This document shows, piece by piece, positions 1,964 through 64,000 of a DNA stretch of 64,000 nucleotides. Position 1 is the first letter of the stretch; each line of letters opens with the position of its first letter. The notes beneath the pieces were generated by a model. It worked only from the letters and a program-made list of their open reading frames with translations. It searched no databases and was not told the DNA's origin. The translations under genes were made by a program, and so were the position numbers. The stretch covers positions 309,830,335-309,894,334 of the forward strand of contig NC_052146.1 of NCBI RefSeq assembly GCF_902713615.1, read 5' to 3'. Source of the stretch: Scyliorhinus canicula (Eukaryota).

Positions 1964-2768
1964 GGATATACAAGCAATGAACAACATTTGAATGATTAAT
2001 ACATAATTTGCAACAAATATACACTGAACATAGATTACTTTCCAGAAACTTCTGCTCATGGCCACAGCAACCAAGTAGCTTGGCCCCCTATTCACCACAT
2101 TAAACATTCGCTCCGTCCACCACTGATACACAGGAGCAGCCGTCTGTACCATCTCCAAGATACACTGCATCAACTCACAAATACTCCTTCCACAGCACCT
2201 TCCAAAGCCACAATGTCTACCACCTTGAAGAACAAGGTTAGCAAATGTACAGGAATACCACCACCTGCAAACTCCCCCCTCAGGTCACACACCATCCCAA
2301 CTGGGAAATATCAAATCATTCCTTCACTGTCGCTGGGTCAAAATCCTGGAAGTCCCTCCCTAACAGCACTGTGGGTGTACCTACACCACATGGCATGCAG
2401 CGGTTCGAGAAGTCAACTCCCACCACCTTCTCCAGGGCAGTTTGGGATGGCACATTGCCAATAATGCCCACCAAATATGAATATGAAACAAACAGCTCGA
2501 GGTACCACATTGACAAAAACCTGAGTAAACAAAGGAGAGGGAGAAAGATAGAAACAAAGAGATGGAGAGAAACAGAGAAACATCAATGTATTTAAGTTCT
2601 GGAAGACAGAATCTTTCTGTGAGTAAGACCACATGAGTTCACACAGTCTATTTTCTAATGTGTTCCCTTTACCATTGGGGATTGTGATATTTATCACTTA
2701 CATACCTCCGATACAGTCATGAGTAAGTGGTGATTACTTCAGGATATTGATCTGGAAACTGTACTTAC

Positions 2769-2971
2769 TGGTTACATTCAGCTGTGATCCATTCCCATAG
2801 ATCTCTCCCCACACGGAGCAGTAATAGACGGCAGTGTCACTGGGCTGCACGTTGCTGATTGTCAGGATGAAGGTTTTATTGGCCGTGTCTCGGGAAGGAT
2901 GGAAACGCTCAGTGAAACCCGGACTCCGTTGTGTGTTGTTCTTTATATCATGTGTTAAAAACCCTCTCGAT
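2769..2971 (-). pseudogene. 3' half of a second VJ-type V exon (psi-V1): ...ERV/LTHDIKNNTQRSPGFTERFHPSRDTANKTFILTISNVQPSDTAVYYCSVWGEIYGNGSQLNVT
   Basis: DTAVYYC and YGNG motifs, intact donor ACCA|gtaagt at 2769, and 57 nt identical to the exon at 8043-8387. The 5' half is replaced by a Harbinger terminus at 2972, and an extra T near 2960 shifts the frame. Confidence 0.9.
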
Positions 2972-4334
2972 GGCCGGGATTCTCCCCTACCTGGCGGGGC
3001 GGGGGTCCCGGTGTACCGGAGTGGCGAGAACCACTACGGAATTCTCCGCACCTCTAGGGGCTAGGCCTGCGCCGGAGTGGTTGGCGCCCCGCTGACTGAC
3101 GCGAACGGCCTTTGGTGCCCCACGGACATGGCATCATGCGGAGGAGGAGGATACCTGCTCCTGGTTCCTGTCAAGGTCACCGCAGCCGACCTCAGGATCA
3201 CTCCAGGGTTCAAGCGGGGACCTGTGAGGCATTTCCCAACCGACAGCCCGCAAGTGAACCTGTGAAGTCACGAATGTCCGGTTTTCCCGCGCATCTAACT
3301 ATATAAACTTCAACCTGGACAAGGCCCAACAGGATGCCCGGGAGGTAGGATTCTCCGCTATGGCCGGGATACTCCAGATCCAGGGGGTAATAGATCACAC
3401 GCATGTCGACTGGCTCGCACCGGGGCATCACGGAGTTCCCTTCATCAACAGAAAGGGATTCCACTCCCTGAACCTCCAACTTGTGTGTGACCACCACATG
3501 GAGATCGTGCTCGTGTGTGCACACTTCCCCGGGAGTGTGCACGACAGCTGCATCCTGGGACAGTCAGAGATCCCCGACATCTTCGAGGGACACCCCAGGG
3601 TGAAGGGCTGGCCGTTGGGGGATAAGGGGTAGCCGCTGAGGGCCTGGCTAATGCCGCCAGTGCGGAGGCCGGAGACCGAGGCAGAGACCCGATAACGAGG
3701 CCCATGTGGCCACCCGGGCTGTCATTGAGCGGGGCATCGGACTGCTGAAAATGCAGTTCCCATTCATCGGCCGCTCTGGTGGTGCCCTGCAGTATACGCC
3801 CCGGAGAGTTGTCTGCTTTAGGGTGGTCTGCTGTGCCCTCCACATCCTGGCACAGAAGCGGGTTGACATGCTGGAGCTGGAGACGTATCATACGGCCACC
3901 TCTGAAGAGGAGGCGCTGGAACAGGAGGGGCTGGAGAACGGGCCCGGGGAGGACCCACACGAGATGGAGCACAGTCGGTGGTGGTGAGGGTCCAGCATGC
4001 CCAAAGGACCAGGGAGACCCTAATCCTTGCCCTCTTCACCTCAGGACAGAGGGGCAGCTGGATTGAGCTCCGGATGCCCCTGCGTCCTCTGGCTCTGCCA
4101 GACCTGGCAGCTCCCCACTGTGTGCACCATGGCGTTGATGCCCTCAGCAATGCCCCTCTGTGAGCGGGCCATTCTCTGCAATGCCTCGCCAATGTCCACC
4201 TGTCTCTGTGAATTGAACATGCCCTGCAGTGCCTCAGCAATGCCCACCTTAGACTGGGACATGGTCCACAGCACCTGGAAAAGGGCCACCTGTGTCTGGG
4301 ACATGCTGCCGAGGCTCTCAGCCACGGCCCTCAC
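2972..4334 (+). mobile_element. Truncated PIF/Harbinger DNA transposon: degenerate HARBI1-like DDE transposase (+, ~3130-3990) and convergent C-terminal part of a second ORF (-, ~4041-4334)
   Basis: Motifs GVIDHTHV, NRKGFHSLNLQ, PGSVHD, LGDKG and VIERGIGLLK match the Harbinger DDE domain. Tail-to-tail second ORF. Left terminus ggccgggattctccc. Contains stops and frameshifts, and the right end is lost. Confidence 0.9.
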
Positions 4335-7872: not shown

Positions 7873-8042
7873 GGAACTTTGGGGACTTGCTGAAGCTGAG
7901 CTCAGCTTCTTCCCCACAGTGAACCCATCAGTAAGATCACTTTACATCACCTCCTAGCTCTTCATCATCACAAACTCATCTCCAATTCACTCATCTGGAA
8001 GAGGTTATTGCTGTGGGTAATTGGAATGAAAACTCTACTTAC

Positions 8043-8387
8043 TGGTTACATTCAGCCGGCTTCCATTCCCATGGATCCATCCCTGCACTGAGCAGTAATA
8101 GACGGCAGTGTCACTGGGCTGCACGTTGCTGATTGTCAGGATGAAGCTGTTGGAGTCGATGTGTCGGGAAGGCTGGAATCGTTCAGAGGAGCCTGAATAC
8201 CGGGTGGCATAATTACGTTTATTGAGTGCTAAAATCCTCTCCCTCTGTTTCCCTGGCAGCTCCCGGTACCAATAAACATTTCTGTATCTCACTTTGGCGT
8301 TCTGCATGGTGCACTGTAACCGTGCAGTCTGACCCTCTGTGACATGTTCCACACTCGGAGACTGGATAAGGACTGGATCAGTCGCAC
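8043..8387 (-). CDS. Intact V-set Ig exon with germline-joined J-like strand (V2; phase 1-1, 345 nt): (G)ATDPVLIQSPSVEHVTEGQTARLQCTMQNAKVRYRNVYWYRELPGKQRERILALNKRNYATRYSGSSERFQPSRHIDSNSFILTISNVQPSDTAVYYCSVQGWIHGNGSRLNVT
   Basis: B-strand Cys, C-strand WYR, D-x-A-V-Y-Y-C and a GxG G strand. Acceptor ttttctctgaaag|GT at 8387, donor ACCA|gtaagt at 8043. Open frame (ORF track 8035-8352). Confidence 0.95.
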
Positions 8388-9251
8388 CTTTCAGAGAAAA
8401 ACAAAATCAGTGAGTTAAATTCTGAGCTGAAAGTTTGCTGTGAGTATTTAAAGGGACAGTCCAGGCAGTAGAAGTTCTGTGTTAAAGAGAGGAAACAGCT
8501 TCTGAGACTGATCTAGTTGTGTTAGTTTGTTAATGATTTCTATCCTGGGGGTTACTCTGTGCTGATCTCAGCAGTACAGATGTGTTGATATAATTGTGAA
8601 ATGCAATATTGTTCTCACACTGTGGAACAGCTCTCTCAAACACACTGACCTCTCCCAGTTAGTGTCTAAATGAATTCCTGGGATGTGGGTGTCGCTGGCT
8701 AAGCCAGCTTTTATTACCCATCCCTAATTGCCCTGAAGGAGGCGGTGGTGAGCTGCCTTCTTGAACTGCTGCAGTCCATGGAGATTGGAGCTATCTTTAC
8801 TGAACCAATAGTGGGAGAGTGTTTCTCACAATAGGAAGCAGGTTTGGGAATTAGATTGGGAAGTGTCTGCAACATTCGAAGAGACAGTCAGACATTTAAA
8901 GGGACAGGACCACCCCTCGGATCAACAGAACCACAGCCTTTTGGGTTTGTGAAAACTGAGGCCTCTCCACAGGTTGGGGTCCGGGGGGTCAGATTGGGAG
9001 GAATGGCGTCTCTATCCCTCCATTCCTCAGCGACTGGGATTTTACCAGCTGCTACTGCAACACGGTGGGCATGGGAGTGGGGGTAACTGAGAGAGATTGG
9101 AAATAAATCTGAGGGAGCCAAACCCCGTCCCTCCAACAGACAGTTTTAATATTGGTAAAGGGCACAGAGCCAGTGGGGGTCCCAGGAGAGGCAAATCGAG
9201 GGAAATACAGCTCAGGTAGTGGGTGAGTCAGTGGATCTCTCAGGAAGGTGT

Positions 9252-12484: not shown

Positions 12485-14189
12485 TATAAAAGTCTATCTA
12501 TTGGATTGGCTTGTGTGAACTTAAAGACAGTGAAGGAGTGTTGCTTTTCCGGTGTGGTATTTGAGTTTAAGTGTGTTGTGGACAATGGCTCTTTCAGAGG
12601 CTCAGAAGTGTTTGGGGGTGGAGAATGTCACACGCAGTACCTTACGGACAGAGATAAAAAGCAGACTGTTAGATTTGGCAAAAACATTGCAGTTAACATT
12701 CCCTGATAAAATGCAAAAAGATGAGGTAATTATGGCGGTGGATAAGCATTTAAAGTTGAGATAGATTCTGACTCATTGGAAATGGCAAAAATTCAGTTGC
12801 AAATTAAACAAATGGAACATGAGAAAGAATTAAAGCAGCTTGAATACGAAAGAGAGAGAGGGGAAAAAGAAAGAGAGAGAGAGAGAGAGAGGAAAAATAA
12901 AGTGAGAGAGAACAAAAAGAAAAAGAAAGGGAGATACAGCTCAGGGAAAAAGATAAAGAGAGAGAGTTTGAACTTCTGAAAATGGCCATAAAACATGACA
13001 GTCAATTTATATTGGCAGACGTAAAGGGACACATACAGTTGGAGGAGATGGATGAGGATAGTGAGAAAGAGCATCAAAGTCGAAGGCTTGGTGGGAATCT
13101 ATTTAAATATGACCAAGCATTGCCAATGTTTGATGAAAAGGAAGTGGAAGCATTTTTCATTTATTTTGAGGACGTAGCTAAACAAATGAAATGGCCACAG
13201 GACATGTGGGTGCTACTGATTCAAATAAAGCTGGTAGGTAGAGCTTGTGAAGTGTTTGCATCACTATCGGAGGAGGTATCTGGAACGTATGAGGAGGTGA
13301 AGAAATCCATCTTAGGTGCATATGAGCTAGTGCCTGAAACGTACAGACAAAGGTTTAGAAATTTAAGGAAAGAATTTGGACAAACATACATGGAGTTTGA
13401 AAGGCTCAAACAGAGTGACTTTGATAGGTGGATAAGGGATTTGAAAATAGACCAATCGTATGAAGCTCTCAGAGAAATTATACTTTTGGAGGAGTTTAAA
13501 AATTCAATTCATGATGTAGTGAGAACTCATGTGGAAGAGCAGAGGGTTAAAACTGAGAGATTAGCAGCAGAAATGGCAGATGATTATGAATTAGTTCATA
13601 AATCAAAGTTTGGTTTCCGACATCAGTTTCAGCCGGTGAGGGAAAGAAACTAGGGACATGAGAAATACTCAAGTGGTAACGGTAAAGGTGATCTGATGGG
13701 AGACAATAAAGAGAGTGTACCACAGATTAAAAACGAAATCCAGGAGTATGGAAAAGAAATGAAATGTTTCAAATGTTTTCACTGTAATAAACTAGGCCAT
13801 GTAAAGCCACAGTGTTGGTGTTTGAAGAAAAGCACTGGGAAGGCTGATGTGATAAAACAGGATAAGACAGTGGAATTTATTAGAGTGGTAAAGGAAAGCC
13901 CAAGGGGAACGAAGGAGGTGCAATCAATTGTACAGCCTGTTCAAGAAGTAATTGTTAAGAAGGTGTCAGATGTCTTTAAAGAATTTACTTGTGTGGATGA
14001 AGTTTACTCATGTGTATCAGGAGGAGCAGGTAAAGAAGTCACAATTTTAAGAGACACAGGGGCTCGTCAATCTTTAATGGTAGGAGATGAGGAATTATGT
14101 AGTTTGGGAAGAATGTTGCCAGAAAAGGCGGTGATTTGTGGAATTCAGGGTGAGAGGAGTAGCGTTCCATTATATAAGGTAAGGCTGGC

Positions 14190-17100
14190 TTGAGATTCTC
14201 AGCCGGAGCAGGATCCAGGGGGCTGTCGGGAAGGTAAGTTCAACCTTTAAAAACTTACATTGCAGAAGAAGCGTCCTTCAGATTTTTGGCGGGAGCAGGG
14301 TCCAGGGCCCTGTCGGGAAGGTAAGTGTAAACATTAAAAACTTACCTTTAGAGCTCCTGGAAGTCGGGCATGGGGATTTCTGGGAAGATTTGTTAGTACC
14401 TGTATATAAGTTGGGCAGCTGCTAAACTCGAGACACTACACTTGTCGTGTCCCCCACCCTTCCACCTCTTCTAACCTAAGGGGTTGAGTGAGTAACAGGT
14501 AAACTCTTCCTTTTTTTTTCTTGTTTTATTTAGAGGAAGGCAGTGCAATGTTCCTCCTGCAGAATGTTTGAGGTGAGGGATGCCTTCAGTGTCCCTGCTG
14601 ATTTCATCTGTGGGAAGGGCACCCATCTCCAGCTCCTCAGAAACCGTGTTAGGGAACTGGAGCTGGAGCTGGATGAATTTCAGAAGATTCAGGAGGCAGA
14701 TGTGGTCATAGATAGAAACTTCAGGGATGTAGTTACTCTGAAGAATAAAGATAGATGGGTGACGGTGAGAGGGGCTGGGAAGAAGCAGACAGTATAGGGA
14801 TCCCTTGTGGTCGTTCCCCTTAGTAACAAGTATACCGCTTTGGATAATGTTGGGGGACGACTATCCAGGGGTAAGCCAAGGGGTATAGGTCTCTGGCACA
14901 GAGTCTGTGCCTGTTGCTCAGCAGGGAAGAGGGGAGAGGAGTAGAGCAATGGTCATTGGAGACTCCATAGTTAGGGGGATAGATAGGAGATTCTGTGGGA
15001 ACGAGAGAGACTCGCGGTTGGTGTGTTGCCTCCCAGGTGCCAGGGTCCGCGATGTCTCGGATCGTGTTTTCGGGATCCTTAAGGGGGAGGGGGAGCAGCC
15101 CCAAGTCGCGGTCCACATAGGCACCAACAACATAGGTCAGAAAAGGGATAGGGATGTAAGGCAGGAATTCAGGGAGCTAGGGTGGAAACTTAGATCCAGG
15201 ACAAACAGAGTTATTATCTCTGGGTTGTTACCCATGCCACGTGCTAGCAAGACGAGGATTAGGGAGAGAGAGCAGTTGAACACGTGGCTACAGGGATGGT
15301 GCAGGAGGGAGAGTTTCAGATTCCTGGATAATTGGGGCTCATTCTGGGGTAGGTGGGACCTCTACAAATGGGATGGTCTACACCTGCACCAGAGGGGTAC
15401 AAATATCCTGGGGGGAAATTTGCTCATGCTCTTCGGGTGGGTTTAAAGTTCAGCAGGGGATTGGGAACCTGAATTGTAGCTCCAGTATACAGGAGGTTGA
15501 GAGTAGTGAGGTCATGAGTACGGTTTCAAAGCTGCAGGAGTGTACCAGCAGGCAGGAAGATGGTTTAAAGTGTGTCTTCTTCAATGCCAATAGCATCCGG
15601 AATAAGGTGGGTGAACTTGCGGCATGGGTTAGTACCTGGGACTTCGATGTTGTGGCCATTTCGGAGACATGGATCGAGCAGGGACAGGAACGGTTGTTGC
15701 AGGTGTCAGGGTTTAGATATTTCAATAAGCTCAGGGAAGGTGGTAAAAGAGGGGGAAGGGTGGCATTGTTAGTCAAGGACAGTATTATGGTGGCAGGAAG
15801 GACGTTTGATGAGGAGTCGTCTACTGAGGTAGTATGGGCTGAGGTTAGAAACAGGAAAGGAGAGGTCACCCTGTTAGGGGTTTTCTATAGGCCTCCGAAA
15901 AGTTCCAGAGATGTAGAGGAAAGGATTGCAAAGATGATTCTGGATAGGAGCGAAAGTAACAGGGTAGTTGTTATGGGGGACTTTAACTTTACAAATATTG
16001 ACTGGAAACGCTATAGTTCGAGTACTTTAGATGGGTCCGTTTTTGTCCAATGTGTGCAGGAGGGTTTCCTGACACAGTATGTAGATAGGCCAACGAGAGG
16101 CGAGGCCATATTGGATTTGGTGCTGGGTAATGAACTAGGGCAAGTGTTAGATATGGAGGTAGGTGAGCACTTTGGTGATAGTGACCACAATTCGATTACG
16201 TTTACTTTAGTGATGGAAAGGGATAGGTATATACCACAGTGCAAGAGTTATATCTGAGGGAAAGGCAATTATGATGCGATGAGGCAAAGGTAGGATGCAT
16301 CGGATGGGGAGGAGAACTGCAGGGGATGGGCACAATGGAAATGTGGAGCTTGTTCAAGGAACAGCTTCTGCGTGTCCTTGATAAGTATGTACCTGTCAGG
16401 CAGGGAGGAAGTGGTTGAGTGAGGGAACCATGGTTTACTAAAGCAGTTGAAACATTTGTCAAGAGGAAGAAGGAGGCTTATGCAAAAATGAGACGTGAAG
16501 GTTCAGTTAGAGCGCTTGAGAGTTACAAGTTAGCCAGGAAGGACCTAAAGAGAGAGCTAAGAAGAGCCAGGAGGGGACATGAGAATTCTTTGGAAGGTAG
16601 GATGAAGGTTAACCCTAATGCTTTCTATAGATATGTCAGGAATAAAGAATGACTAGCGTAAGAGTGGGGCCAGTCAAGGACAGCAGTGGGAAGTTGTGCA
16701 TGGAGTCCGAGGAGATAGGAGAGGGGCTAAATGAATATTTGTCGTCAGTATTCACACAGGAAAAAGACAATGATGTTGAGGAGAATACTGAGATACAGGT
16801 TACTAGACTAGAAGGGCTTGAGGTTCATAAGGAGGAGGTGTCAGCAATTCTGGAAAGTGTGAAAAAAGATAAGTCCCTGGGCCGGATGGGATTTATCCTA
16901 GGATTCTCTTGAAGCTAGAGAGGCGATTGCTGAGCCTTTGGCTTTGATCTTTATGTCATCATTGTCTACAGGATTAGTGACAGAATACTGGAGGATAGCA
17001 AATGTTGTCCCCTTGTTCAAGAAAGGGAGTAGAGACAACCCCGGTAACTATAGACCAGTGAGCCTTACTTCTGTTGTGGGCAAAGTCCTGGAAAGTTTTA

Positions 17101-36922: not shown

Positions 36923-37233
36923 GTAATCCATCCAAACACACCCACTTAATGTCCAGACTGTCACTCAAACCCATTGTTACATTCAATGAATAACAGAGAA
37001 GAATGGGAATACCGAGGTTTCTGACCCGTGTTCCCAGTCTGTGCAACTGTGTCAGGTGCACTAAACATTCTCAATATGGTGATAAATTCTGCTGTAACTC
37101 TCATGTCCAGTTTGAATGTTCGAACTCTAGAATTCATACAAGTTACAGGTGCAGAGACACCGCAGCACAAACCAGGGAGAGTTCTTTTATAACAAGTTAA
37201 ACTTCTTCAAACCAAACTAAAACTTGTACTTAC

Positions 37234-37285
37234 CCCCAGAAACACAGAGTGACAGAGTCACAACAAAAAGTGTTTTACTGATCAT
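37234..37285 (-). CDS. Signal-peptide (leader) exon: MISKTLFVVTLSLCVSG(G), 52 nt, phase-1 end
   Basis: ATG at 37285, basic N-region, hydrophobic core, strong donor GGG G|gtaagt. Typical IgSF leader exon size, and joins in frame to the V exon at 8387 to give ...CVSGGAT-DPVLIQ. Confidence 0.75.
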
Positions 37286-49394: not shown

Positions 49395-52245
49395 GAGGTT
49401 CTACTTCTACTTCAACGCCAGGAGCATCCGGAATAAGGTGGGTGAGCTTGCAGCATTGGTTGGTACCTGGGATCTCAATGTCGTGGCGATTTTGGAGACA
49501 TGGGTAGAGCAGGGACAGGAATGGTTGTTGCAAGTTCCAGGATTTAGATGTTTCTGTAAGAACAGAGAAGATGGTAAAAGAGGGGGGGTGTGGCATTGTT
49601 AATCAAGGAAAGTATTACGGAGGTAGAAAGGACGTTTGAGGACTCGTCTACTGAGGTAGTATGGGCCGAGGTTAGGAACAGGAGAGGGGAGGTCACCCTG
49701 TTGGGAGTTGTCTGTAGACCTCCAAATAGTTCCAGAGATGCAGAGGAAAGGATTGCAAAGATGACTCTCGACAGGAGCGAGAGTAACAGGGTAGTTGTTA
49801 TGGGGGACTTTAACTTTCCAAATATTGACTGGAAATACTATAGTTCAAGTACTATAGATGGGTCAGTTTTTGTGCAGTGTGTGCAGGAGGGTATTCTGAC
49901 ACAGTATGTAGACAGGCCAACAAGGGGCGAGGCCACATTGGATTTGGTACTGGGTCATGAACCCGGCCAGGTGTTAGATTTAGATGTAGGTGAGCACTTT
50001 GGTGATAGTGATCACAATTCGGTTATGTTTACTTTAGCAATGGACAGGGATAGGTATATACCGCAAGGCAAGAATTATAGCTGGGGGAAAGGCAATTATG
50101 ATGCTATTCGGCAAGATTTAGGAGGTATAGGATGGAGAAGGAAACTGCAGGGGATGGGTACAATCGAAATGTGGAGCTTTCTCAAGGAACAGCTACTGCG
50201 TGTCCTTGATAAGTATGTACCTGTCAGGCAGGGAGGAAGTTGTCGAGCAAGGGAACCGTGGTTTACTAAGGAAGTTGAAGCACGTGTCAAGAGGAAGAAG
50301 AAGGCTTATGTTAGGATGAGACATGAAGGCTCAGTTAGGGCACTTGAGATTTACAAGTTAGCCAGGAAGGACCTAAAGGGAGAGTTAAGAAGAGCGAGGA
50401 GAGGACACGAAAAGACGTTGGCGGATAGGATCAAGGAAAACCCTAAGGCTTTCTATAGGTATATCAGGAACAAAAGAATGACTAGAGTAAGATTAGGGCC
50501 AATCACGGATAGTAGTGGAAAGTTGTGTGTGGAATCAGAGGAGATAGGGGAAGCGTTAAATGGATAGTTTTCGTCAGTGTTTACACTGGAGAAAGACAAT
50601 GTTGTCGAGGAGAATACTCAGGTTCAGTCGACCAGGCTAGATGGAATTGAGGTTCACAAGGAGGAGGTGTTAGCAATTTTGGAAAATGTAAAAATAGATA
50701 AGTACCTTGGGCCAGATGGGATTTATCCTACGATTTTCTGGGAAGCCAGGGAGGTAATTGCAGAGCCTTTGTCCTTGATCTTTATGTCGTCTTTGTCGAC
50801 AGGAATAGTGCCGGAAGACTGGAGGATAGCAAATGTTGTCCCCTTGTTCAAGAAGGGGAGTAGAGACAACCCTGGTAATTATAGACCTGTGAGCCTTACT
50901 TCGGTTGTGGGTAAAATGTTGGAAAAGGTTATAAGAGAGAGGGTTTATAATCATCTTGAAAAGAACAAGTTGATTAGCGATAGTCAACACGGTTTTGTGA
51001 AGGGTAGGTCATGCCTCACAAACATTATTGAGTTTTTTGAGAAGGTGACCAAACAGGTGGATGAGGGTAAAGCGGTTGATGTGGTGTATATGGATTTGAG
51101 TAAGGCGTTTGATAAGGTTCCCCACAGTAGGCTATTGCAGAAAATAAGGAAGTATGGGATTGAAGGTGAGTTAGCGGTTTGGATCAGTAATTGGCTAGCT
51201 GAAAGAAGACAGAGGGTGGTGGTTGATGGCAAATGTTTATCCTGGAGTTCAGTTACTAGTGGTGTACCACAAGGATCTGTTTTGGGGCCACTGCTGTTTG
51301 TCATTTTTATAAATGACCTGGAAGAGGGTGTAGAAGGATGGGTTAGTAAATTTGCAGATGACACGAAGGTCGGTGGAGTTGTGGATAGTGCTGAAGGATG
51401 TTATAGGATACAGATGGACATAGATAAGCTGCAGAGCTGGGCTGATAGGTGGCAGATGGAGTTTAATGCAGAAAAGTCTGAGGTGGTTCACTTTGGAAGG
51501 AGTAACAGGAATGTAGAATACTGGGCTAATGGCAAGATTCTTGGGAGTGTAGATGAACGGAGAGATCTCGGCATCCAGGTACATAAATCCCTTAAAGTTG
51601 CCACCCAGGTTAATAGGGCTGTTAAGAAGGCATATGGTGTGCTAGCCTTTATCTGTAGGGGGATTGAGTTTCGGAACCACAAGGTCATGCTGCAGCTGTA
51701 CATAACTCTGATGCGGCCGCTCCTGGAGTACTGCGTGCAGTTCTGGTCACCACATTGTAGGAAGGATGTGAAATCTTTGGAAAGCGTTCAGAGGAGATTT
51801 AATAGGACGTTGCCTGGTATGGAGAGAGGGTCATACGAGGAAAGACTCAGGGACCTGAGGTTGTTTTCATTAGAGAGGAGAAGGCTGAGAGGTGACTTAA
51901 TAGAGCCATATAAGATAGTCAGAGGGTTAGATAGGGTGGACAGTGAGAATCTCTTTCCTCAGATGGTGATGACCAACACGAGGGGACATAGCTTTAAATT
52001 GAGGGGTGGTAGATATAGGACAGATGTCAGAGGCAGTTTCTTTACTCAGAGAGTAGTAGGGATGTGGAACGCCCTGCCTGCAATAGTAGTAGACTCGCCA
52101 ACTTTAAGGGCATTTAAGTGGTCCCTGGATAGACATATGGATGAAAATGGAATAGTGTAGGTCAGATAGGCTTCAGATGGTTTCACAGGTCGGCGCAACA
52201 TCGAGGGCCGAAGGGCCTGTACTGCGTGTAATGGTCTATGTTCTA
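49395..52245 (+). mobile_element. 5'-truncated CR1/HER1-type LINE ORF2 (APE-RT), young
   Basis: Long ORFs 49590-50567 and 50577-52160 (KFADDTK), separated by a single break. Intact 3' tail. Confidence 0.93.
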
Positions 52246-59060: not shown

Positions 59061-59066
59061 TTTATT
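59061..59066 (-). other. Candidate polyadenylation signal of gene B
   Basis: AATAAA on the minus strand just beyond the minisatellite. Alternative sites at 58262 and 58142. Confidence 0.35.
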
Positions 59067-59119
59067 TCATGAACAATGTTCTCAGCCCAGTGTGACATTT
59101 GGGCAATTTCAGTCTCTAC

Positions 59120-60437
59120 AGTAATATCAGGGTGTGTGTGTCCAGTAATATCAGGGTGTGTGTGTCCAGTAATATCAGGGTCTGTGTGTCCAGTAATATC
59201 AGGGTCTGTGTGTCCAGTAATATCAGGGTGTGTGTGTCCAGTAATATCAGGGTGTGTGTGTCCAGTAATATCAGGGTCTGTGTGTCCAGTAATATCAGGG
59301 TCTGTGTGTCCAGTAATATCAGATTCTGAGTGCCCAGTAATATCAGGGTCTGTGTGTCCAGTAATATCAGGGACTGAGTGTCCAGTAATATCAGGGTCTG
59401 TGTGTCCAGTAATATCAGGGTCTGTGTGTCCAGTAATATCAGGGTCTGTGTGTCCAGTAATATCAGAGTGTGTGTGTCCAGTAATATCTGGGTCTGTGTG
59501 TCCAGTAATATCAGGGTTTGTGTGTCCAGTAATATCAGAGTTTGTGTGTCCAGTAATATCAGGGTTTCTGTGTCCAGTAATATCAGGGTTTCTGTGTCCA
59601 GTAATATCAGGGTCTGTGTGTCCAGTAATGTCAGGGTCTGCGTGCCCAGTAATATCAGGGTCTGTGTGTCCAGTAATATCAGGGTCTGAGTGTCCAGTAA
59701 TGTCAGGGTCTGTGTGTCCAGTAATATCAGGGTCTGAGTGTCCAGTAATATCAGGGTCTGTGTGTCCAGTAATATCAGGGTCTGTGTGTCCAGTAATATC
59801 AGGGTCTGAGTGTCCAGTAATATCAGGGTCTGAGTGTCCAGTAATATCAGGGTCTGTGTGTCCAGTAATATCAGGGTCTGAGTGTCCAGTAATATCAGGG
59901 TCTGAGTGTCCAGTAATATCAGGGTCTGAGTGTCCAGTAATATCAGGGTCTGTGTGTCCAGTAATATCAGGGTGTGTGTGTCCAGTAATATCAGGGTCTG
60001 TGTGTCCAGTAATATCAGGGTCTGAGTGTCCAGTAATATCAGGGTCTGTGTGTCCAGTAATATCAGGGTCTGTGTGTCCAGTAATATCAGGGTCTGAGTG
60101 TCCAGTAATATCAGGGTCTGAGTGTCCAGTAATATCAGAGTCAAGAGTGTCCAGTAATATCAGGCTCTCAGTGTCCAGTAAAATCAGGGTCTGTGTGTCC
60201 AGTAATATCAGGGTCTGGGAGGGTCTGTGTGTCCAGTAATATCAGGGTCTGTGTGCCCAGTAATATCAGGGTCTGTGTGTCCAGTAATATCAGGGTCTGG
60301 GATGGTCTGTGTGCCCAGCAATATCAGGGTCTGGGAGGGTCTGTGTGCCCAGTAATATCAGGGTCTGGGATGGTCTGTGTGCCCAGCAATATCAGGGTCT
60401 GGGAGGGTCTGTGTGCCCAGTAATATCAGGGTCTGGG
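59120..60437. repeat. 24-bp minisatellite (tccagtaatatcagggtctgtgtg), ~45 regular units then longer variant units
   Basis: Direct inspection. It produces the long 8-residue-periodic ORFs on both strands. Confidence 0.98.
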
Positions 60438-60573
60438 ATTTACGATCTCGCTCTGATATTGTTGAGAGATTGAAGCCGTTGAAATGTGCAGGAAATGCAG
60501 AGATGATTGTGATTGGATGGGGTTTTGGTCACTGCTGCTTGTCCCACTGGTTAATTGTTGCTGGTTTTGAGGT

Positions 60574-60690
60574 TTAAGAACGTTGAACAACAGCATACTC
60601 CGCCGTGCTTTCAGTCAGTGATACTGCCGGCTGCCTGGTATCTGGGCAATGGAATCGAAGCTCAGCATATTTACATTCCCCTTCACCTGA
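60574..60690 (-). CDS. Terminal cytoplasmic exon of receptor gene B: SGEGECKYAELRFHCPDTRQPAVSLTESTAEYAVVQRS*
   Basis: Hand translation. Phase-0 acceptor tattggattacag|TCA at 60690 and TAA at 60574-60576. Two YxxL/V motifs 24 residues apart. Too short for the ORF track. Confidence 0.8.
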   Translation of the reverse strand, partial: SGEGECKYAELRFHCPDTRQPAVSLTESTAEYAVVQRS

Positions 60691-61300
60691 CTGTAATCCA
60701 ATAGAAATATTGATCAGTATTTATTTCCACACAGAATGGAAGAATGTCTGTCAACAGATCGAACGGTATTATTATTAATAACTGAATGATTTCTTCTTCT
60801 TTGCCTTTCTCTCTGGAAGGTACTGACTGGCCGCTGGGATGTGTTTTGTATTGACTCGGGTCGCTCTGCTACAGCTGTGAATTTGTGCAGAGCAAGATCC
60901 CACAAATAACAATGTGACAATGACCAATCAGCTTTGGTAACGTTTTTTCGGGATAAATATCACCCAGGACATTAAAGGATGATTCCTCTGCCCATCTTCC
61001 AAATATTCCCAGGGAATATTTTACATTTCATGTCCTTATACCTCAGGGACTGCAGCAGTTCAAGAAGGCAGCTCCCCACCACCTCCTCAATGATAGAATC
61101 CCGCTGCCAGCGAACAGCGCGCGGCCGAGGAACATGCGTCTGGGGGCCCGAGAATCCAGTCCCCAGTGTTAGAATGTAAGTTATTGTTTTCAATGGCATG
61201 ATCTGTCCAAACACCAATCACGCGGAAGAGAATCACATTTTTCGCTTCTCTACAGAGTTTAGGCCCCACGGTGACTTTCTCACGGACGCAGAGGGGCTCA

Positions 61301-61555
61301 AAATCACCCCTCAACAAATCACCCCTCAGCAAATCACCCCTCAACAAATCACCCCTCAACAAATCACCCCTCAACAAATCACCCCTCAACAAATCGCCTC
61401 TCAACAAATCACCCCTCAACAAATCACCCCTCAACAAATCACCCCTCAACAAATCACCCCTCAACAAATCACCCCTCAACAAATCACCCCTCAACAAATC
61501 ACCCCTGAGAAATATCACACCTCAAAAATATCACACCTCAAAAAATCACCCCTCA
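61301..61555. repeat. 15-bp minisatellite (aaatcacccctcaac) x ~13 plus degenerate units
   Basis: Direct inspection. Source of the LLRGD/ITPQQ/KSPLN repeat ORFs. Confidence 0.97.
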
Positions 61556-61675
61556 AGTTTCAGGTTGGAAACCCACACAAACTCTGTCCCCAACTTTAAC
61601 CTGGTCACATAGAAGGTGCTAGAAACTTTTCAAAAAATGTCTGAGAATATAAATAAGCAGTGATTCTGCAAGTCA

Positions 61676-62012
61676 GTGTGTGTGTGAGAGAGAGAGAAAG
61701 AGATGGCGACAGAGTGAAGGAGAGAGGGTGGTGGCACGCGTGAGGGAGAGGGCAGCAATGTGAGAGTAGATGTTTGTGTGTGAGAGGGTGAGTGTCTGTG
61801 TGTATGAGGGTGTGTGTGTGTGAGAGGCTGTGTGAGAAGATGTGTCTGAGGGTGTGTGTGGGTGCGTGTGTGAGAGGGAGTGTGAGACAGTGTGTGTGAG
61901 GATGTGAGTGTGTGTGTGAGAGGGTGTGAGAGTGTGAAAGTGTATCTGTGAGTGTGTGAGAGAGGGTGTGAGAGTTTGTGTGAGTGTGAGTGTGCCAATA
62001 TATGAGTGTGTG
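61676..62012. repeat. Low-complexity (TG/GA)-rich tract
   Basis: gtgtgtgagagggtgtg degenerate repeats. Confidence 0.9.
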
Positions 62013-62366
62013 TGATGGAGTGGGAAGTTGTGAAACTTCCCCCCCCCCAGGTTTAAACTAACCTTCTGAGTTACTGTTAATTCCAGTTTTCTGCAGTTTA
62101 TTAGTAAATTGGTTCACAGAACCCAATAGATTTGAAAAATATGCCATCACCAACTAATTGAAAACACGTTGTGCAGACAGACAGGTGGAGCGGAGAAATC
62201 AGAGCAGGTTGTCTATCACTCTCCTGTCTGTAACAGGATTGATTTGTAAACTACAGTAACATTCAAACTCCTCCTCTTTCATTGATGTGGTTCCTATTTT
62301 GGGAAATGGCAGCAAATCTAAAATGCAGCAAAGAACAACAGCTAAGCCCCATTTCCATTTCCTTAC

Positions 62367-62419
62367 CAAAGGAGCAGGAGGGGATTCTTGAACCTCTTGA
62401 TTGCTGCTCCGTGTTTTAT
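62367..62419 (-). CDS. Short first cytoplasmic exon of gene B (53 nt, phase 1-0): (D)KTRSSNQEVQESPPAPL
   Basis: Strong acceptor gtgttttcttttag|AT and donor TTG|gtaagg. Phases bridge a phase-1 TM exon end to the phase-0 terminal exon at 60690. Confidence 0.65.
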
Positions 62420-62579
62420 CTAAAAGAAAACACAAAGATGTTTCTTCAGAATAGATCCATGTAAAGGCCGAGCTCAGGAAACTGGGAATGATAACAAATG
62501 ACAATTCCGGAGTGACTTGGGCAGTTTTCCCGGGAGACATGAGGCCTCCTCTCCGTTATAAAGCTCATCAGAGAAATCA

Positions 62580-64000
62580 GAAACTCACAGAACAGGAGGA
62601 GGCCATTCAGCCCATTGAATCTGTGCTGATTCTTTAAAGGGCCATTGTGCCTAATCCCACATTCCTGCTTTTTATCCGGAATCCTGTAAATTCCTGAGAC
62701 ATACACAGAAACGTGGAAAATAGAATCAGGAGGAAAATCAGGCCCTTCGAGCCTGCTCCCCCATTCATTATGAACATGGCTGATCATCAAGTTCAATGCC
62801 CTGATCCCGCCTTCCCCCCATATCCCCCGATCCCTTTAGCCCCAAGAGCAAAATCTAATTCCTTCTTGAAATTACACAACATTTTGCCCTCAACGACTTT
62901 CTGTGGGAGTGAATTCCACAGATTCACCTCTCTCTGGGTGAAGAAATTTCTCCTCACCTCAGTTCTCAAAGGTTTACCCCTTATCCTCAAACTATGACCC
63001 CTAGTTCTGGACTCCCCCACCATCGGGAACATTCTTTCTGAATCTACCCTGTCTAATCCTGTTAGAATTTTAGAAGTTTCTATGAGATCCCCTCTCACTC
63101 TTCTAAACTCCAGTGAATATCATCCTAACCCACTTAGTCTCTCCTCATAGGACAGTCCCACCATCCCAGGATTCAGCCAGGTAAACCTTCGCTGCTCTCC
63201 CTCCATAGCAAGTACCTGCCCAACTCTCTTTGAAGATGATTTCTGGAATCAGCTTCCACCACATTTTCCGGGCGAGCGTTTCAGATCCCGACAATTCTCT
63301 GAGTGAAAAACATTTCTCCCCGTCTCCCCATTCGATCTTTACCCAATGATTTTCAATCTCTGATCTCTAGTTGTTAACCCACTCGCCAGAGCAAATAGTT
63401 TTTCTCTCTTAATTCAATCAAAACTCTCATCTCAAACTAATCGGTCAACTCTTAACCATCTCCAATCCCAGGAATCCCTCTGAGAAATGACAATGTGATC
63501 ACTCTACAAGGATATTCCAGATGCTGGTGAAATATCGGAGGCCGCTTCGTGGACTTTCTATGTCTGAAAGTTTATCATTTTGGGGTCACTCACTGTAACA
63601 GCACAGGAACAGGCCCTTCGGCCCTCCAAGCCTGCACCGATCCAGATCCTCTATCTAAAACTGTCACCAATTTCTAAGGATCTGTATCCCTTTGCTCCCT
63701 GCCCAGTCATGTGTCTGTCGAGATACATCTTAAATGTCGCTCTCGTGCCCTCCTCTACCACCTCCGCCGGCAATGCGTTCCAGGCACCCACCACCCTCTG
63801 CGTAAAGAACTTTCCACGCATATCTCCCTTAATCTTTTCCCCTCTCACCTTGAACTCATGACCCCTAGTAATTGAGTCCCCCACTCTGGGAAAAAGCTTC
63901 TTGCTATCCACCCTGTCTATACCTCTCATGATTTTGTAGACCTCAATGAGGTCCCACCTCAACATCCGTCTTTCTGATGAAAATAATCCTAATCTACTCA
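62580..64000 (-). mobile_element. CR1-type LINE 3' fragments (62580-63230, ~63260-63450, 63590-64000)
   Basis: RGDLIE..KI..G.DRVD, RGH and FFTQR motifs with LINE tails. Confidence 0.85.

What the first reader, a model, noticed from the sequence alone, without database searches (positions are those of the whole stretch)
60574..62419. Twin-tyrosine cytoplasmic tail with PD-1/SIRP-like spacing but non-canonical flanks
Seen: ECKYAELRF and STAEYAVV with Tyr-Tyr spacing of 24 residues, the second near the C-terminus, preceded by a short 53-nt exon. Established: ITIM (I/V/L/SxYxxL/V) plus ITSM (TxYxxV/I) pairs about 23-26 residues apart recruit tandem-SH2 phosphatases (PD-1 VDYGELDF...TEYATI has the same short-exon plus terminal-exon layout). 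Here the -2 positions are Cys and Ala, so SHP-1/SHP-2 preference may differ. Inference: an inhibitory receptor.
Basis: partly seen in the sequence, partly recalled or inferred. Interest (0 to 1): 0.75.

Follow-up and report, generated by a model that had tools for sequence, protein, structure and literature searches.

The report
Shark receptor tail with three tyrosines
These two small exons are the real, spliced end of a catshark immune-receptor gene. They encode a brake-type signalling tail that is conserved between shark families, but its tyrosine motifs miss the textbook definitions and its function is untested.

Summary
A 53-nt exon (62367-62419) is spliced with GT..AG ends to a last coding exon (60577-60690). 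Together they read (D)KTRSSNQEVQESPPAPL / SGEGECKYAELRF...STAEYAVVQRS*.

Transcript-like contigs from two species labels carry exactly this joint. They also run upstream into an exon outside the window that ends ...DQNPVYATVD. The tail therefore has three tyrosine motifs, not two.

The same tail ends RefSeq "uncharacterized" proteins of Scyliorhinus canicula, S. torazame and Mustelus asterias. These have two or three antibody-like V(J) domains, an uncharged membrane span and this tail.

All three tyrosines and the 24-residue spacing are kept in Mustelus, where the last motif is a textbook ITSM (TEYSAV). In Scyliorhinus none of the three passes the strict ITIM or ITSM pattern.

Sister proteins are 95% identical up to the 53-nt exon and then end in a canonical ITAM. 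Two S. torazame genes are annotated with both endings as isoforms.

An inhibitory role through SHP or SHIP recruitment is the best reading, but it is inferred, not shown.

The scan has already met this gene family at several other places on this chromosome.

The parts
62367..62419 (-). 53-nt cytoplasmic exon. It enters in phase 1 and leaves in phase 0, and encodes (D)KTRSSNQEVQESPPAPL.
   Evidence: AG and GTAAGG flanks. Covered by spliced contigs of X7, X3 and X12. 94% identical to residues 315-332 of P0003 and P0006.
60691..62366 (-). Intron of 1676 nt with GT..AG ends. It is filled with a 15-nt tandem repeat, GT-rich simple sequence and a short dispersed repeat.
   Evidence: Joint 60690 to 62367 in contigs of X3 and X12. 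Repeats.
60577..60690 (-). Last coding exon, 38 codons: SGEGECKYAELRFHCPDTRQPAVSLTESTAEYAVVQRS. The second tyrosine codon (Y2, in CKYAEL) is at 60667-60669 and the third (Y3, in AEYAVV) at 60595-60597.
   Evidence: 95% identical to the C-terminus of P0001 and 94.7% to that of P0003. An X7 contig is identical to the window over 60445-60640.
60574..60576 (-). Stop codon TAA.
60441..60573 (-). Start of the 3' untranslated region. It was seen in contigs down to the edge of the laid stretch and runs on into a 24/34-nt minisatellite.
   Evidence: Contigs of X3, X7 and X12 cover 60441/60445 to 60690/60640. Minisatellite.
59061..59066 (-). Candidate polyadenylation signal AATAAA, just past the minisatellite. 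Inferred only.
   Evidence: It is the first TTTATT/TTTAAT on the plus strand below the stop codon. No read evidence.

Best explanation
The two exons are the last two coding exons of one gene in a large tandem array of catshark immune-type receptor genes, probably of the small-spotted catshark.

The protein family is a type I membrane protein. It has a leader, two or three antibody-like V domains with a built-in J motif, a short stalk, an uncharged membrane span and a cytoplasmic tail of about 85 residues. The V, membrane-span and NPVY exons of this particular copy lie beyond the window's end.

The tail carries three tyrosine motifs that all read Y-A-x-(L/V):
- NPVYATV, in the exon before the 53-nt exon;
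- ECKYAELRF, 30 residues on;
- TAEYAVV, 24 residues further.

Most likely mechanism (inferred): after ligand engagement next to an activating receptor, Src-family kinases phosphorylate the tyrosines. Pairs of phosphotyrosines 24 or 30 residues apart then dock the tandem SH2 domains of SHP-1 or SHP-2. pYAEL may also bind SHIP, and the NPxY may bind a PTB adaptor such as Dok or Shc. Together these would damp signalling.

The gene is the brake-type partner of sister genes or isoforms that have the same ectodomain, membrane span, NPVY exon and 53-nt exon but end in a different last exon encoding a canonical ITAM.

Shown: the exons, the splice, presence in transcripts, membership of the family and motif conservation. 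Inferred: phosphorylation, the partners and inhibition.
For: - Splice joint with GT..AG ends in contigs of two species labels.
- An X7 contig of 681 nt joins the 53-nt exon to 610 nt of upstream mRNA. That mRNA begins with codons for DQNPVYATVD, which is not the genomic continuation, so the contig is cDNA-derived.
- An X7 contig is 100% identical to the window over 196 nt of the last exon and the 3' untranslated region.
- The only hit for the 38-residue exon among 1.84 billion representatives is the C-terminus of a 342-aa S. torazame V-set protein (E 5e-15).
- A tail-region search finds S. canicula, S. torazame and Mustelus asterias proteins with the layout V-set, V-set, membrane span, tail.
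- Window versus Mustelus: the motif blocks are 26/32 identical against 12/31 elsewhere (Fisher p = 8e-4). The spacing between the second and third tyrosines is 24 in both, and the Mustelus third motif TEYSAV is a canonical ITSM.
- The membrane span has no charged residue and is followed by KKR.
- Type B tails read YxxL-x7-YxxI (ITAM) on a backbone 95% identical to the type A protein.
- Alanine at pY+1 and L/V/I at pY+3 are preferred by SHP SH2 domains, and cartilaginous-fish PD-1 also has alanine at pY+1 (PMC12151841).
Against: - In Scyliorhinus, position -2 is P, C and A, so none of the three motifs matches (S/I/V/L)xYxx(I/V/L) or TxYxx(V/I). A hydrophobic or threonine residue at -2 matters for SHP SH2 binding.
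- The ITAM-tailed twins also carry NPVYATV, so that motif cannot be purely inhibitory.
- All three motifs also fit the YxxPhi sorting signal.
- The contigs that show the joint differ from the window at 5-7 of 250 bases, including D to G in CPDT. They may come from an allele or a near-identical paralogue.
- The one raw-read RNA run that was laid (X20) had no reads on the exons.
- The upstream exons of this copy were not seen, so an inactive copy is not excluded.
- No binding or functional data exist.
Confidence: 0.6

Rival explanations
1. The tail is mainly a trafficking signal. NPVY and the two YxxPhi motifs (YAEL, YAVV) would drive clathrin-mediated uptake or sorting of the receptor through AP-2 and PTB-type endocytic adaptors, without phosphatase recruitment.
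For: All three motifs fit YxxPhi. NPVY is the core of the LDL-receptor uptake signal (own knowledge). None passes the strict ITIM or ITSM pattern. NPVYATV is shared by ITAM-tailed twins, as expected of a general trafficking motif.
Against: The aromatic residue of FxNPxY is absent (DEDQNPVY). The exact spacing of 24 is kept across shark families while the linker sequence drifts, which fits a two-site SH2 ligand better than independent sorting signals. Acidic residues precede each tyrosine, as in kinase substrates. The swap of the last exon against an ITAM points to a signalling role.
Confidence: 0.15
2. The tail is a switch-type or activating tail. The last motif would act like a SLAM-family ITSM that recruits SAP/EAT-2-type adaptors, or the tail would recruit Shc/Grb2 through NPxY, giving a co-stimulatory or context-dependent output.
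For: The Mustelus orthologue has a canonical TxYxxV. NPxY can bind Shc (own knowledge).
Against: Scyliorhinus has alanine at -2 and glutamate at -1. PMC12151841 notes that high-affinity SAP binding needs a hydrophobic -1 residue. The family already has a dedicated ITAM ending for activation.
Confidence: 0.1
3. This particular copy is a dead or orphan tail. The exons would be intact by recent duplication, while the transcripts seen come from near-identical paralogues.
For: The joint-bearing contigs differ from the window by 2-3%. No protein with the window's exact tail (QES.., KYAEL, CPD) was found among proteins of 188-598 aa. The RefSeq models in the array span 139-185 kb and look chimeric. 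Raw run X20 shows no reads.
Against: An X7 contig matches the window perfectly over 196 nt where X3 shows four differences. Splice sites and frame are intact.
Confidence: 0.15

Closest known systems
PD-1 and BTLA cytoplasmic tails (ITIM plus ITSM, bidentate SHP-2 ligands)
   Same: Two tyrosine motifs about 24-25 residues apart, the second near the C-terminus. A short cytoplasmic exon is followed by the last exon. The motif cores resemble the PD-1 consensus (I/V)(D/E)Y(A/G)(E/V)L(D/E)F and (T/V)EYATIx(F/Y): YAELxF and EYAxV.
   Different: Position -2 is Cys and Ala, not I/V and T/V. There is an extra NPVYATV motif upstream. The ectodomain is two or three V(J) domains, not one IgV. It is a member of a large tandem array, not a single-copy gene.
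Fc gamma RIIA / Fc gamma RIIB type paired receptors (own knowledge)
   Same: Near-identical ectodomains and uncharged membrane spans. The opposite signal is written in the receptor's own tail: ITAM in one, inhibitory motif in the other. Here the two types are 95% identical up to the last exon.
   Different: The ectodomains are V(J)-type, not C2-type. The inhibitory version has three ITIM-like motifs, not one canonical ITIM. In S. torazame the two endings are annotated as isoforms of one gene.
Teleost novel immune-type receptors (NITR)
   Same: Diversified multigene clusters of non-rearranging V domains with a J or J-like motif. Most are inhibitory through ITIM or ITIM-like ('itim') motifs (PMC2442602). 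By that paper's definition, all three motifs here are ITIM-like.
   Different: NITRs are reported only from bony fish. They have a V domain alone or V plus a six-cysteine I domain, and their activating forms use a charged membrane span with Dap12. Here the layout is V-V(-V), and the activating forms carry their own ITAM.
SIRP-alpha, PECAM-1, G6b-B, LAIR-1 and KIR tails (own knowledge)
   Same: Multiple Yxx(L/V/I) motifs 23-30 residues apart that dock the tandem SH2 domains of SHP-1/2. G6b-B's ITSM is TIYAVV, compared with AEYAVV here. KIR and CEACAM1 genes also have a 53-bp cytoplasmic exon.
   Different: Those tails meet the ITIM/ITSM consensus at -2. No sequence homology to this tail was detected: the 38-aa exon hit only its own family among the representatives.

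Membership tests
ITIM | (S/I/V/L)-x-Y-x-x-(I/V/L) | tested here: not met
   A pattern scan of the window tail and all type A homologues gave no match. Position -2 is P (NPVYATV), C (ECKYAEL) and A (TAEYAVV). The definition is as quoted in PMC12151841.
ITSM | T-x-Y-x-x-(V/I) | tested here: not met
   There is no match in the window or in any Scyliorhinus sequence, where the threonine sits at -3. The Mustelus orthologue does match (TEYSAV).
ITIM-like ('itim') as used for NITRs | An ITIM that lacks the consensus residue at either the first or the last position only | tested here: met
   All three motifs keep Y and L/V at +3 and fail only at -2. The definition is in PMC2442602.
Bidentate tandem-SH2 (SHP-1/SHP-2) ligand | Two phosphorylatable Yxx(L/V/I) motifs roughly 20-30 residues apart in a cytoplasmic tail | tested here: met
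   The spacings are 30 and 24. The 24 is kept in Mustelus (27 and 24 there). The range itself comes from own knowledge of PD-1, SIRP-alpha, KIR and PECAM-1.
Bidentate tandem-SH2 (SHP-1/SHP-2) ligand | Phosphorylation-dependent binding and activation of SHP-1/2 | not testable with these tools
ITAM | Yxx(L/I)-x6-8-Yxx(L/I) | tested here: not met
   This tail has spacings of 24 and 30. The alternative type B last exon of sister proteins does match (YTALQQPTSSVYSEI), but no such exon exists in the window.
NPxY (PTB-binding) motif | N-P-x-Y in the cytoplasmic tail | tested here: met
   NPVY is read from the loose ends of the X7 and X12 contigs and is present in all 16 family proteins. Its exon lies outside the window.
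IgSF V-set type I receptor | Signal peptide, V-set domain(s), a single membrane span, tail inside the cell | tested here: inconclusive
   Met for the homologues: V-set E 1.8e-29 to 3e-52, an uncharged span followed by KKR, and antibody V domains as best solved relatives. This copy's own upstream exons lie outside the window, apart from 30 nt seen in contigs.
PD-1 (PDCD1) orthologue | A single IgV ectodomain, plus the tail consensus (I/V)(D/E)Y(A/G)(E/V)L(D/E)F ... (T/V)EYATIx(F/Y) | tested here: not met
   The homologues have two or three V(J) domains and many paralogues. The tail matches only 5 of 8 and 4 of 8 consensus positions (for the consensus).
NITR | V (with J) alone or with a six-cysteine I domain; activating forms have a charged membrane span; bony fish only | tested here: not met
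   All ectodomain units are V-set with J-like ends. The membrane span is uncharged in both tail types.

The most novel reading that the evidence does not exclude
In this shark receptor family one gene could write opposite signals by its choice of last exon. The same V(J)-V(J) ectodomain, membrane span, NPVY exon and 53-nt exon would be spliced either to the twin-tyrosine, ITIM/ITSM-like exon found here or to a canonical ITAM exon. A cell could then turn one ligand specificity from brake to accelerator by alternative 3' exon use. Two S. torazame genes are annotated in RefSeq with exactly such isoform pairs (first 286 residues identical). For the window's own gene no ITAM exon lies within the 23 kb down to the next gene's leader. 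So the switch would need a cassette upstream of the window's end, or it applies only to other copies.
Probability: 0.2. Interest if true: 0.75.

Novelty: new variant of a known kind. Interest (0 to 1): 0.5.

Why it matters
Sharks are the oldest living lineage with antibodies and T-cell receptors. This tail belongs to a large, unnamed family of non-rearranging, antibody-like V(J) receptors for which I found no paper.

The tail shows that the two-site phosphatase-docking layout is kept across shark families: motif cores of Y-A-x-L/V and a fixed 24-residue spacing. The residue that textbook definitions treat as diagnostic (position -2) is not kept. Pattern-based ITIM/ITSM scans would therefore miss these receptors.

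The family also pairs brake-type and ITAM-type endings on one backbone by swapping only the last exon. That gives a clean natural system for asking how paired receptors arise and stay matched.

Tried and rejected
- **Paralogue tails in the window.** blastn and tblastn with both exons found none.
- **ITAM-type last exon, membrane-span exon or NPVY exon in the window.** None was found, even with word size 2.
- **Upstream exons in 62420-64000.** The stretch holds only CR1/LINE-like tail debris.
- **The search for homologous proteins with the 66-aa tail.** No candidates came back, which reflects the length filter and not absence.
- **Mustelus tail as query.** No further species were found.
- **DNA of homologous loci.** The X2 isoforms are not on record, because only the longest product of a gene is kept. 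Exon layout in other species and the order of the two last exons could therefore not be checked.
- **Raw oligo-dT run X20.** No reads lay on the exons. The tissue is unknown, so this is not evidence of silence.
- **Chance explanation.** Rejected on the splice evidence and the homology, not on the motif itself, which is common by chance.
- **PD-1, CD28-family or NITR membership.** Rejected on ectodomain architecture.
- **Literature searches for the family.** Nothing specific was found.

Full report
**What is in the sequence**

The last coding exon runs from 60690 down to 60577 and reads SGEGECKYAELRFHCPDTRQPAVSLTESTAEYAVVQRS. The stop codon TAA is at 60576-60574.

The upstream exon is 62419-62367, exactly 53 nt. 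It is preceded by TTTTCTTTTAG and followed by GTAAGG. The last exon is preceded by TTGGATTACAG.

The 53-nt exon starts with the second base of a codon and ends on a codon boundary, so the two exons join in frame as (D)KTRSSNQEVQESPPAPL|SGEGEC.... The two tyrosines are 24 residues apart.

The coordinates and the description in the finding are therefore correct.

**Is it more than chance?**

The motif pair alone is not. Two YxxL/V/I motifs 20-30 residues apart occur 23 times in the stop-free six-frame segments of this window. The case rests on transcripts and on homologues.

**Transcript evidence**

I laid four runs on 60441-62700.

- Contigs of X3 (organism A) and X12 (organism B) carry a joint from 60690 to 62367. 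It skips 1676 nt with ends CT..AC on the plus strand, which is GT..AG for a minus-strand gene.
- At 62420 the contigs of X7 and X12 leave the genome and continue with 30 letters. Reverse-complemented, these read GACCAGAACCCTGTGTATGCAACAGTGGAC (DQNPVYATVD) in X7, and the same with a final GGC (G) in X12.
- One more G follows, which completes the split codon G|AT. This is not the genomic continuation, so these contigs derive from spliced RNA.
- It also means the preceding exon, which is not in the window, supplies a third tyrosine motif.
- The X7 contig of 681 nt extends 610 nt further upstream.
- Another X7 contig is identical to the window over 60445-60640, where X3 shows four differences. The window's own version, or an identical copy, is therefore present in that run.

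Caveats:
- The joint-bearing contigs differ from the window at 5-7 of 250 bases. One difference is 60641 T>C, which changes CPDT to CPGT. They may represent an allele or a near-identical paralogue.
- The runs are only guessed to be RNA.
- The single raw oligo-dT run (X20) had no reads on the exons.
- The 3' untranslated region continues at least to 60441, into a minisatellite of 24-nt units with 34-nt variant units at its upper end (59119-60438).
- The first AATAAA on the minus strand is at 59066-59061. It is a candidate polyA signal without read support.

**What the tail is attached to**

The 66-residue tail found nothing in the word-indexed search, because of that tool's length filter. The 38-residue exon was then scored against all 1.84 billion representatives. 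It hit one protein, P0001 (E 5e-15, 95% identity, residues 305-342 of 342). This is XP_072363841.1, an "uncharacterized protein" of Scyliorhinus torazame.

A search with that protein's tail region found:
- S. canicula LOC119976739 (P0003, 370 aa);
- S. canicula LOC119965573 (P0006, 409 aa);
- more S. torazame proteins;
- Mustelus asterias XP_078086639.1, which is misnamed "immunoglobulin gamma-1 heavy chain-like" (P0005, 480 aa).

All share one build:
- a leader;
- two or three V-set domains (Pfam E 1.8e-29 to 3e-52) that end in J or J-like motifs (FGNGTRLNV, SGNGSQLNV) and whose best solved relatives are antibody V domains;
- a short stalk;
- an uncharged membrane span (for example VIVLSTGIILAFVVLFCFALLTCYLV) followed by KKR;
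- the tail ...IPDEDQNPVYATVDDKTRSSNQEVQE.PPAPLSGEGECKYAELRF...AEYAVV.

The tail is therefore cytoplasmic.

No protein with the window's exact tail was returned (it reads QES, KYAEL and CPD where P0003 has QEA, KYAGL and CPG). This copy may be unannotated or modelled differently. The two S. canicula models span 139 and 185 kb and probably jump between array members.

I could not check it.

**Conservation**

All type A tails keep the three tyrosines.

Against Mustelus, which belongs to a different carcharhiniform family, the tail is 60% identical overall. The three motif blocks are 26/32 identical and the rest 12/31 (Fisher p = 8e-4, with blocks chosen after seeing the alignment).

The block GEGEC.YAELRFH is 12/13 identical, including the unusual Cys at -2. 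DQNPVYATVD is 10/10 identical.

The linker between the second and third tyrosines is mostly different in sequence but is exactly 24 residues in both. In Mustelus the last motif is TEYSAV, a canonical ITSM.

**Formal motif tests**

None of the three motifs in Scyliorhinus matches (S/I/V/L)xYxx(I/V/L) or TxYxx(V/I). Position -2 is Pro, Cys and Ala.

By the looser convention used for teleost NITRs, an ITIM-like motif lacks the consensus residue at the first or last position only (PMC2442602). All three motifs qualify under it.

All three read Y-A-x-(L/V). Alanine at pY+1 and L/V/I at pY+3 are among the preferences reported for SHP SH2 domains. Cartilaginous-fish PD-1 also has alanine at pY+1 in its ITIM (PMC12151841).

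The first motif is also an NPxY.

**The ITAM twin**

The cluster members show a second kind of last exon after the same 53-nt exon: NL(K/E/D)(D/A)SPADSDPTY(T/M)ALQQPTSSVYSEI... This is YxxL-x7-YxxI, a canonical ITAM.

In S. canicula, P0003 (twin-tyrosine ending) and P0006 (ITAM ending) are 95% identical over the first 332 residues and differ only in the last exon.

In S. torazame two genes are annotated with isoform X1 (this ending) and X2 (ITAM ending), with identical first 286 residues. In line with this, the X2 products are not on record as separate genes.

In the window there is no ITAM-type exon anywhere. The next gene of the array starts 22-23 kb downstream on the same strand. Its leader MISKTLFVVTLSLCVSGG is at 37285-37232, and its V exons are at 8406-8038 and 2994-2752.

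The window's gene therefore appears to carry only the twin-tyrosine ending, unless a second cassette lies upstream of the window's end.

**Best reading**

This is the brake-type member of a paired receptor family. Supporting points are the uncharged span, three ITIM-like motifs at spacings of 30 and 24, acidic residues before each tyrosine, and an ITAM-bearing counterpart with the same ectodomain.

The likely mechanism is recruitment of SHP-1/2 by pairs of phosphotyrosines, with possible SHIP and PTB-adaptor input. This step is inferred from established knowledge of PD-1, SIRP-alpha, KIR and Fc gamma RIIB and is not shown here.

The non-canonical -2 residues, the presence of NPVYATV in the ITAM forms too, and the fit of all motifs to YxxPhi sorting signals keep three rivals alive: a trafficking tail, a switch-type tail, and an inactive copy.

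**Comparison with known systems and novelty**

The tail works like the ITIM/ITSM tails of PD-1 and BTLA. The family is built like the Fc gamma RIIA/IIB pair, with ITAM or inhibitory motifs in the receptor's own tail. Its genomics resembles NITR clusters. It is a member of none of them by the tests above.

I found no paper on the family. The proteins are predicted in RefSeq under uninformative or wrong names.

Notes of this scan report the same family at several other places on this chromosome, including ITAM-tailed copies and a tail-to-tail pair just before this window. The finding is therefore one more copy of a family the scan has already met.

- the exact splice;
- the third motif;
- conservation of motifs and spacing in Mustelus;
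- the observation that the two opposite endings are exchanged as a single last exon, and are annotated as isoforms in S. torazame.

Noticed in passing
window 37232-37285, 8038-8406, 2752-2994 (minus strand): This is the next gene of the same array. Its leader exon MISKTLFVVTLSLCVSGG is 100% identical to P0011 residues 1-18. It has a complete V(J) exon, then a second V(J) exon of which only the 3' half is recognisable, so that exon may be damaged. Its membrane-span and tail exons must lie before the window's start.
   Followed up: partly
window 59119-60438: A minisatellite of about 46 copies of a 24-nt unit, plus 8 copies of a 34-nt variant, lies directly downstream of the stop codon. It is probably inside the 3' untranslated region. 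It gives long false ORFs in several frames.
   Followed up: partly
window 61301-61556 and 61771-61992: The intron holds a 15-nt tandem repeat (AAATCACCCCTCAAC, 17 copies) and GT/GA-rich simple sequence.
   Followed up: no
window 61040-61084: A stretch of about 45 nt has very high depth in all four runs and loose ends on both sides. It is a piece of a dispersed, highly transcribed repeat and not part of the gene.
   Followed up: no
window 62796-63119 and 63654-63998 (minus strand); 49578-52157 (plus strand); 12901-14190 (plus strand): These are transposon remains. Two are CR1/LINE-like 3' ORF tails just upstream of the 53-nt exon. One is a long endonuclease and reverse-transcriptase ORF. One is a gag-like ORF with a zinc knuckle. 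Most of the window is such debris.
   Followed up: no
P0002/P0008 and P0010/P0007 (S. torazame RefSeq): Two genes are annotated with isoform pairs that are identical for 286 residues and then end either in the twin-tyrosine exon or in a canonical ITAM exon.
   Followed up: partly
P0003 and P0006 (S. canicula LOC119976739, LOC119965573): These RefSeq gene models span 139 kb and 185 kb for proteins of 370-409 aa. They probably stitch exons of different array members. P0006 also ends in a duplicated, truncated ITAM segment.
   Followed up: no
window 60641: T>C in contigs of X3 and X12 changes Asp to Gly in CPDT. All database homologues have Gly, so the window's Asp is the unusual state.
   Followed up: partly
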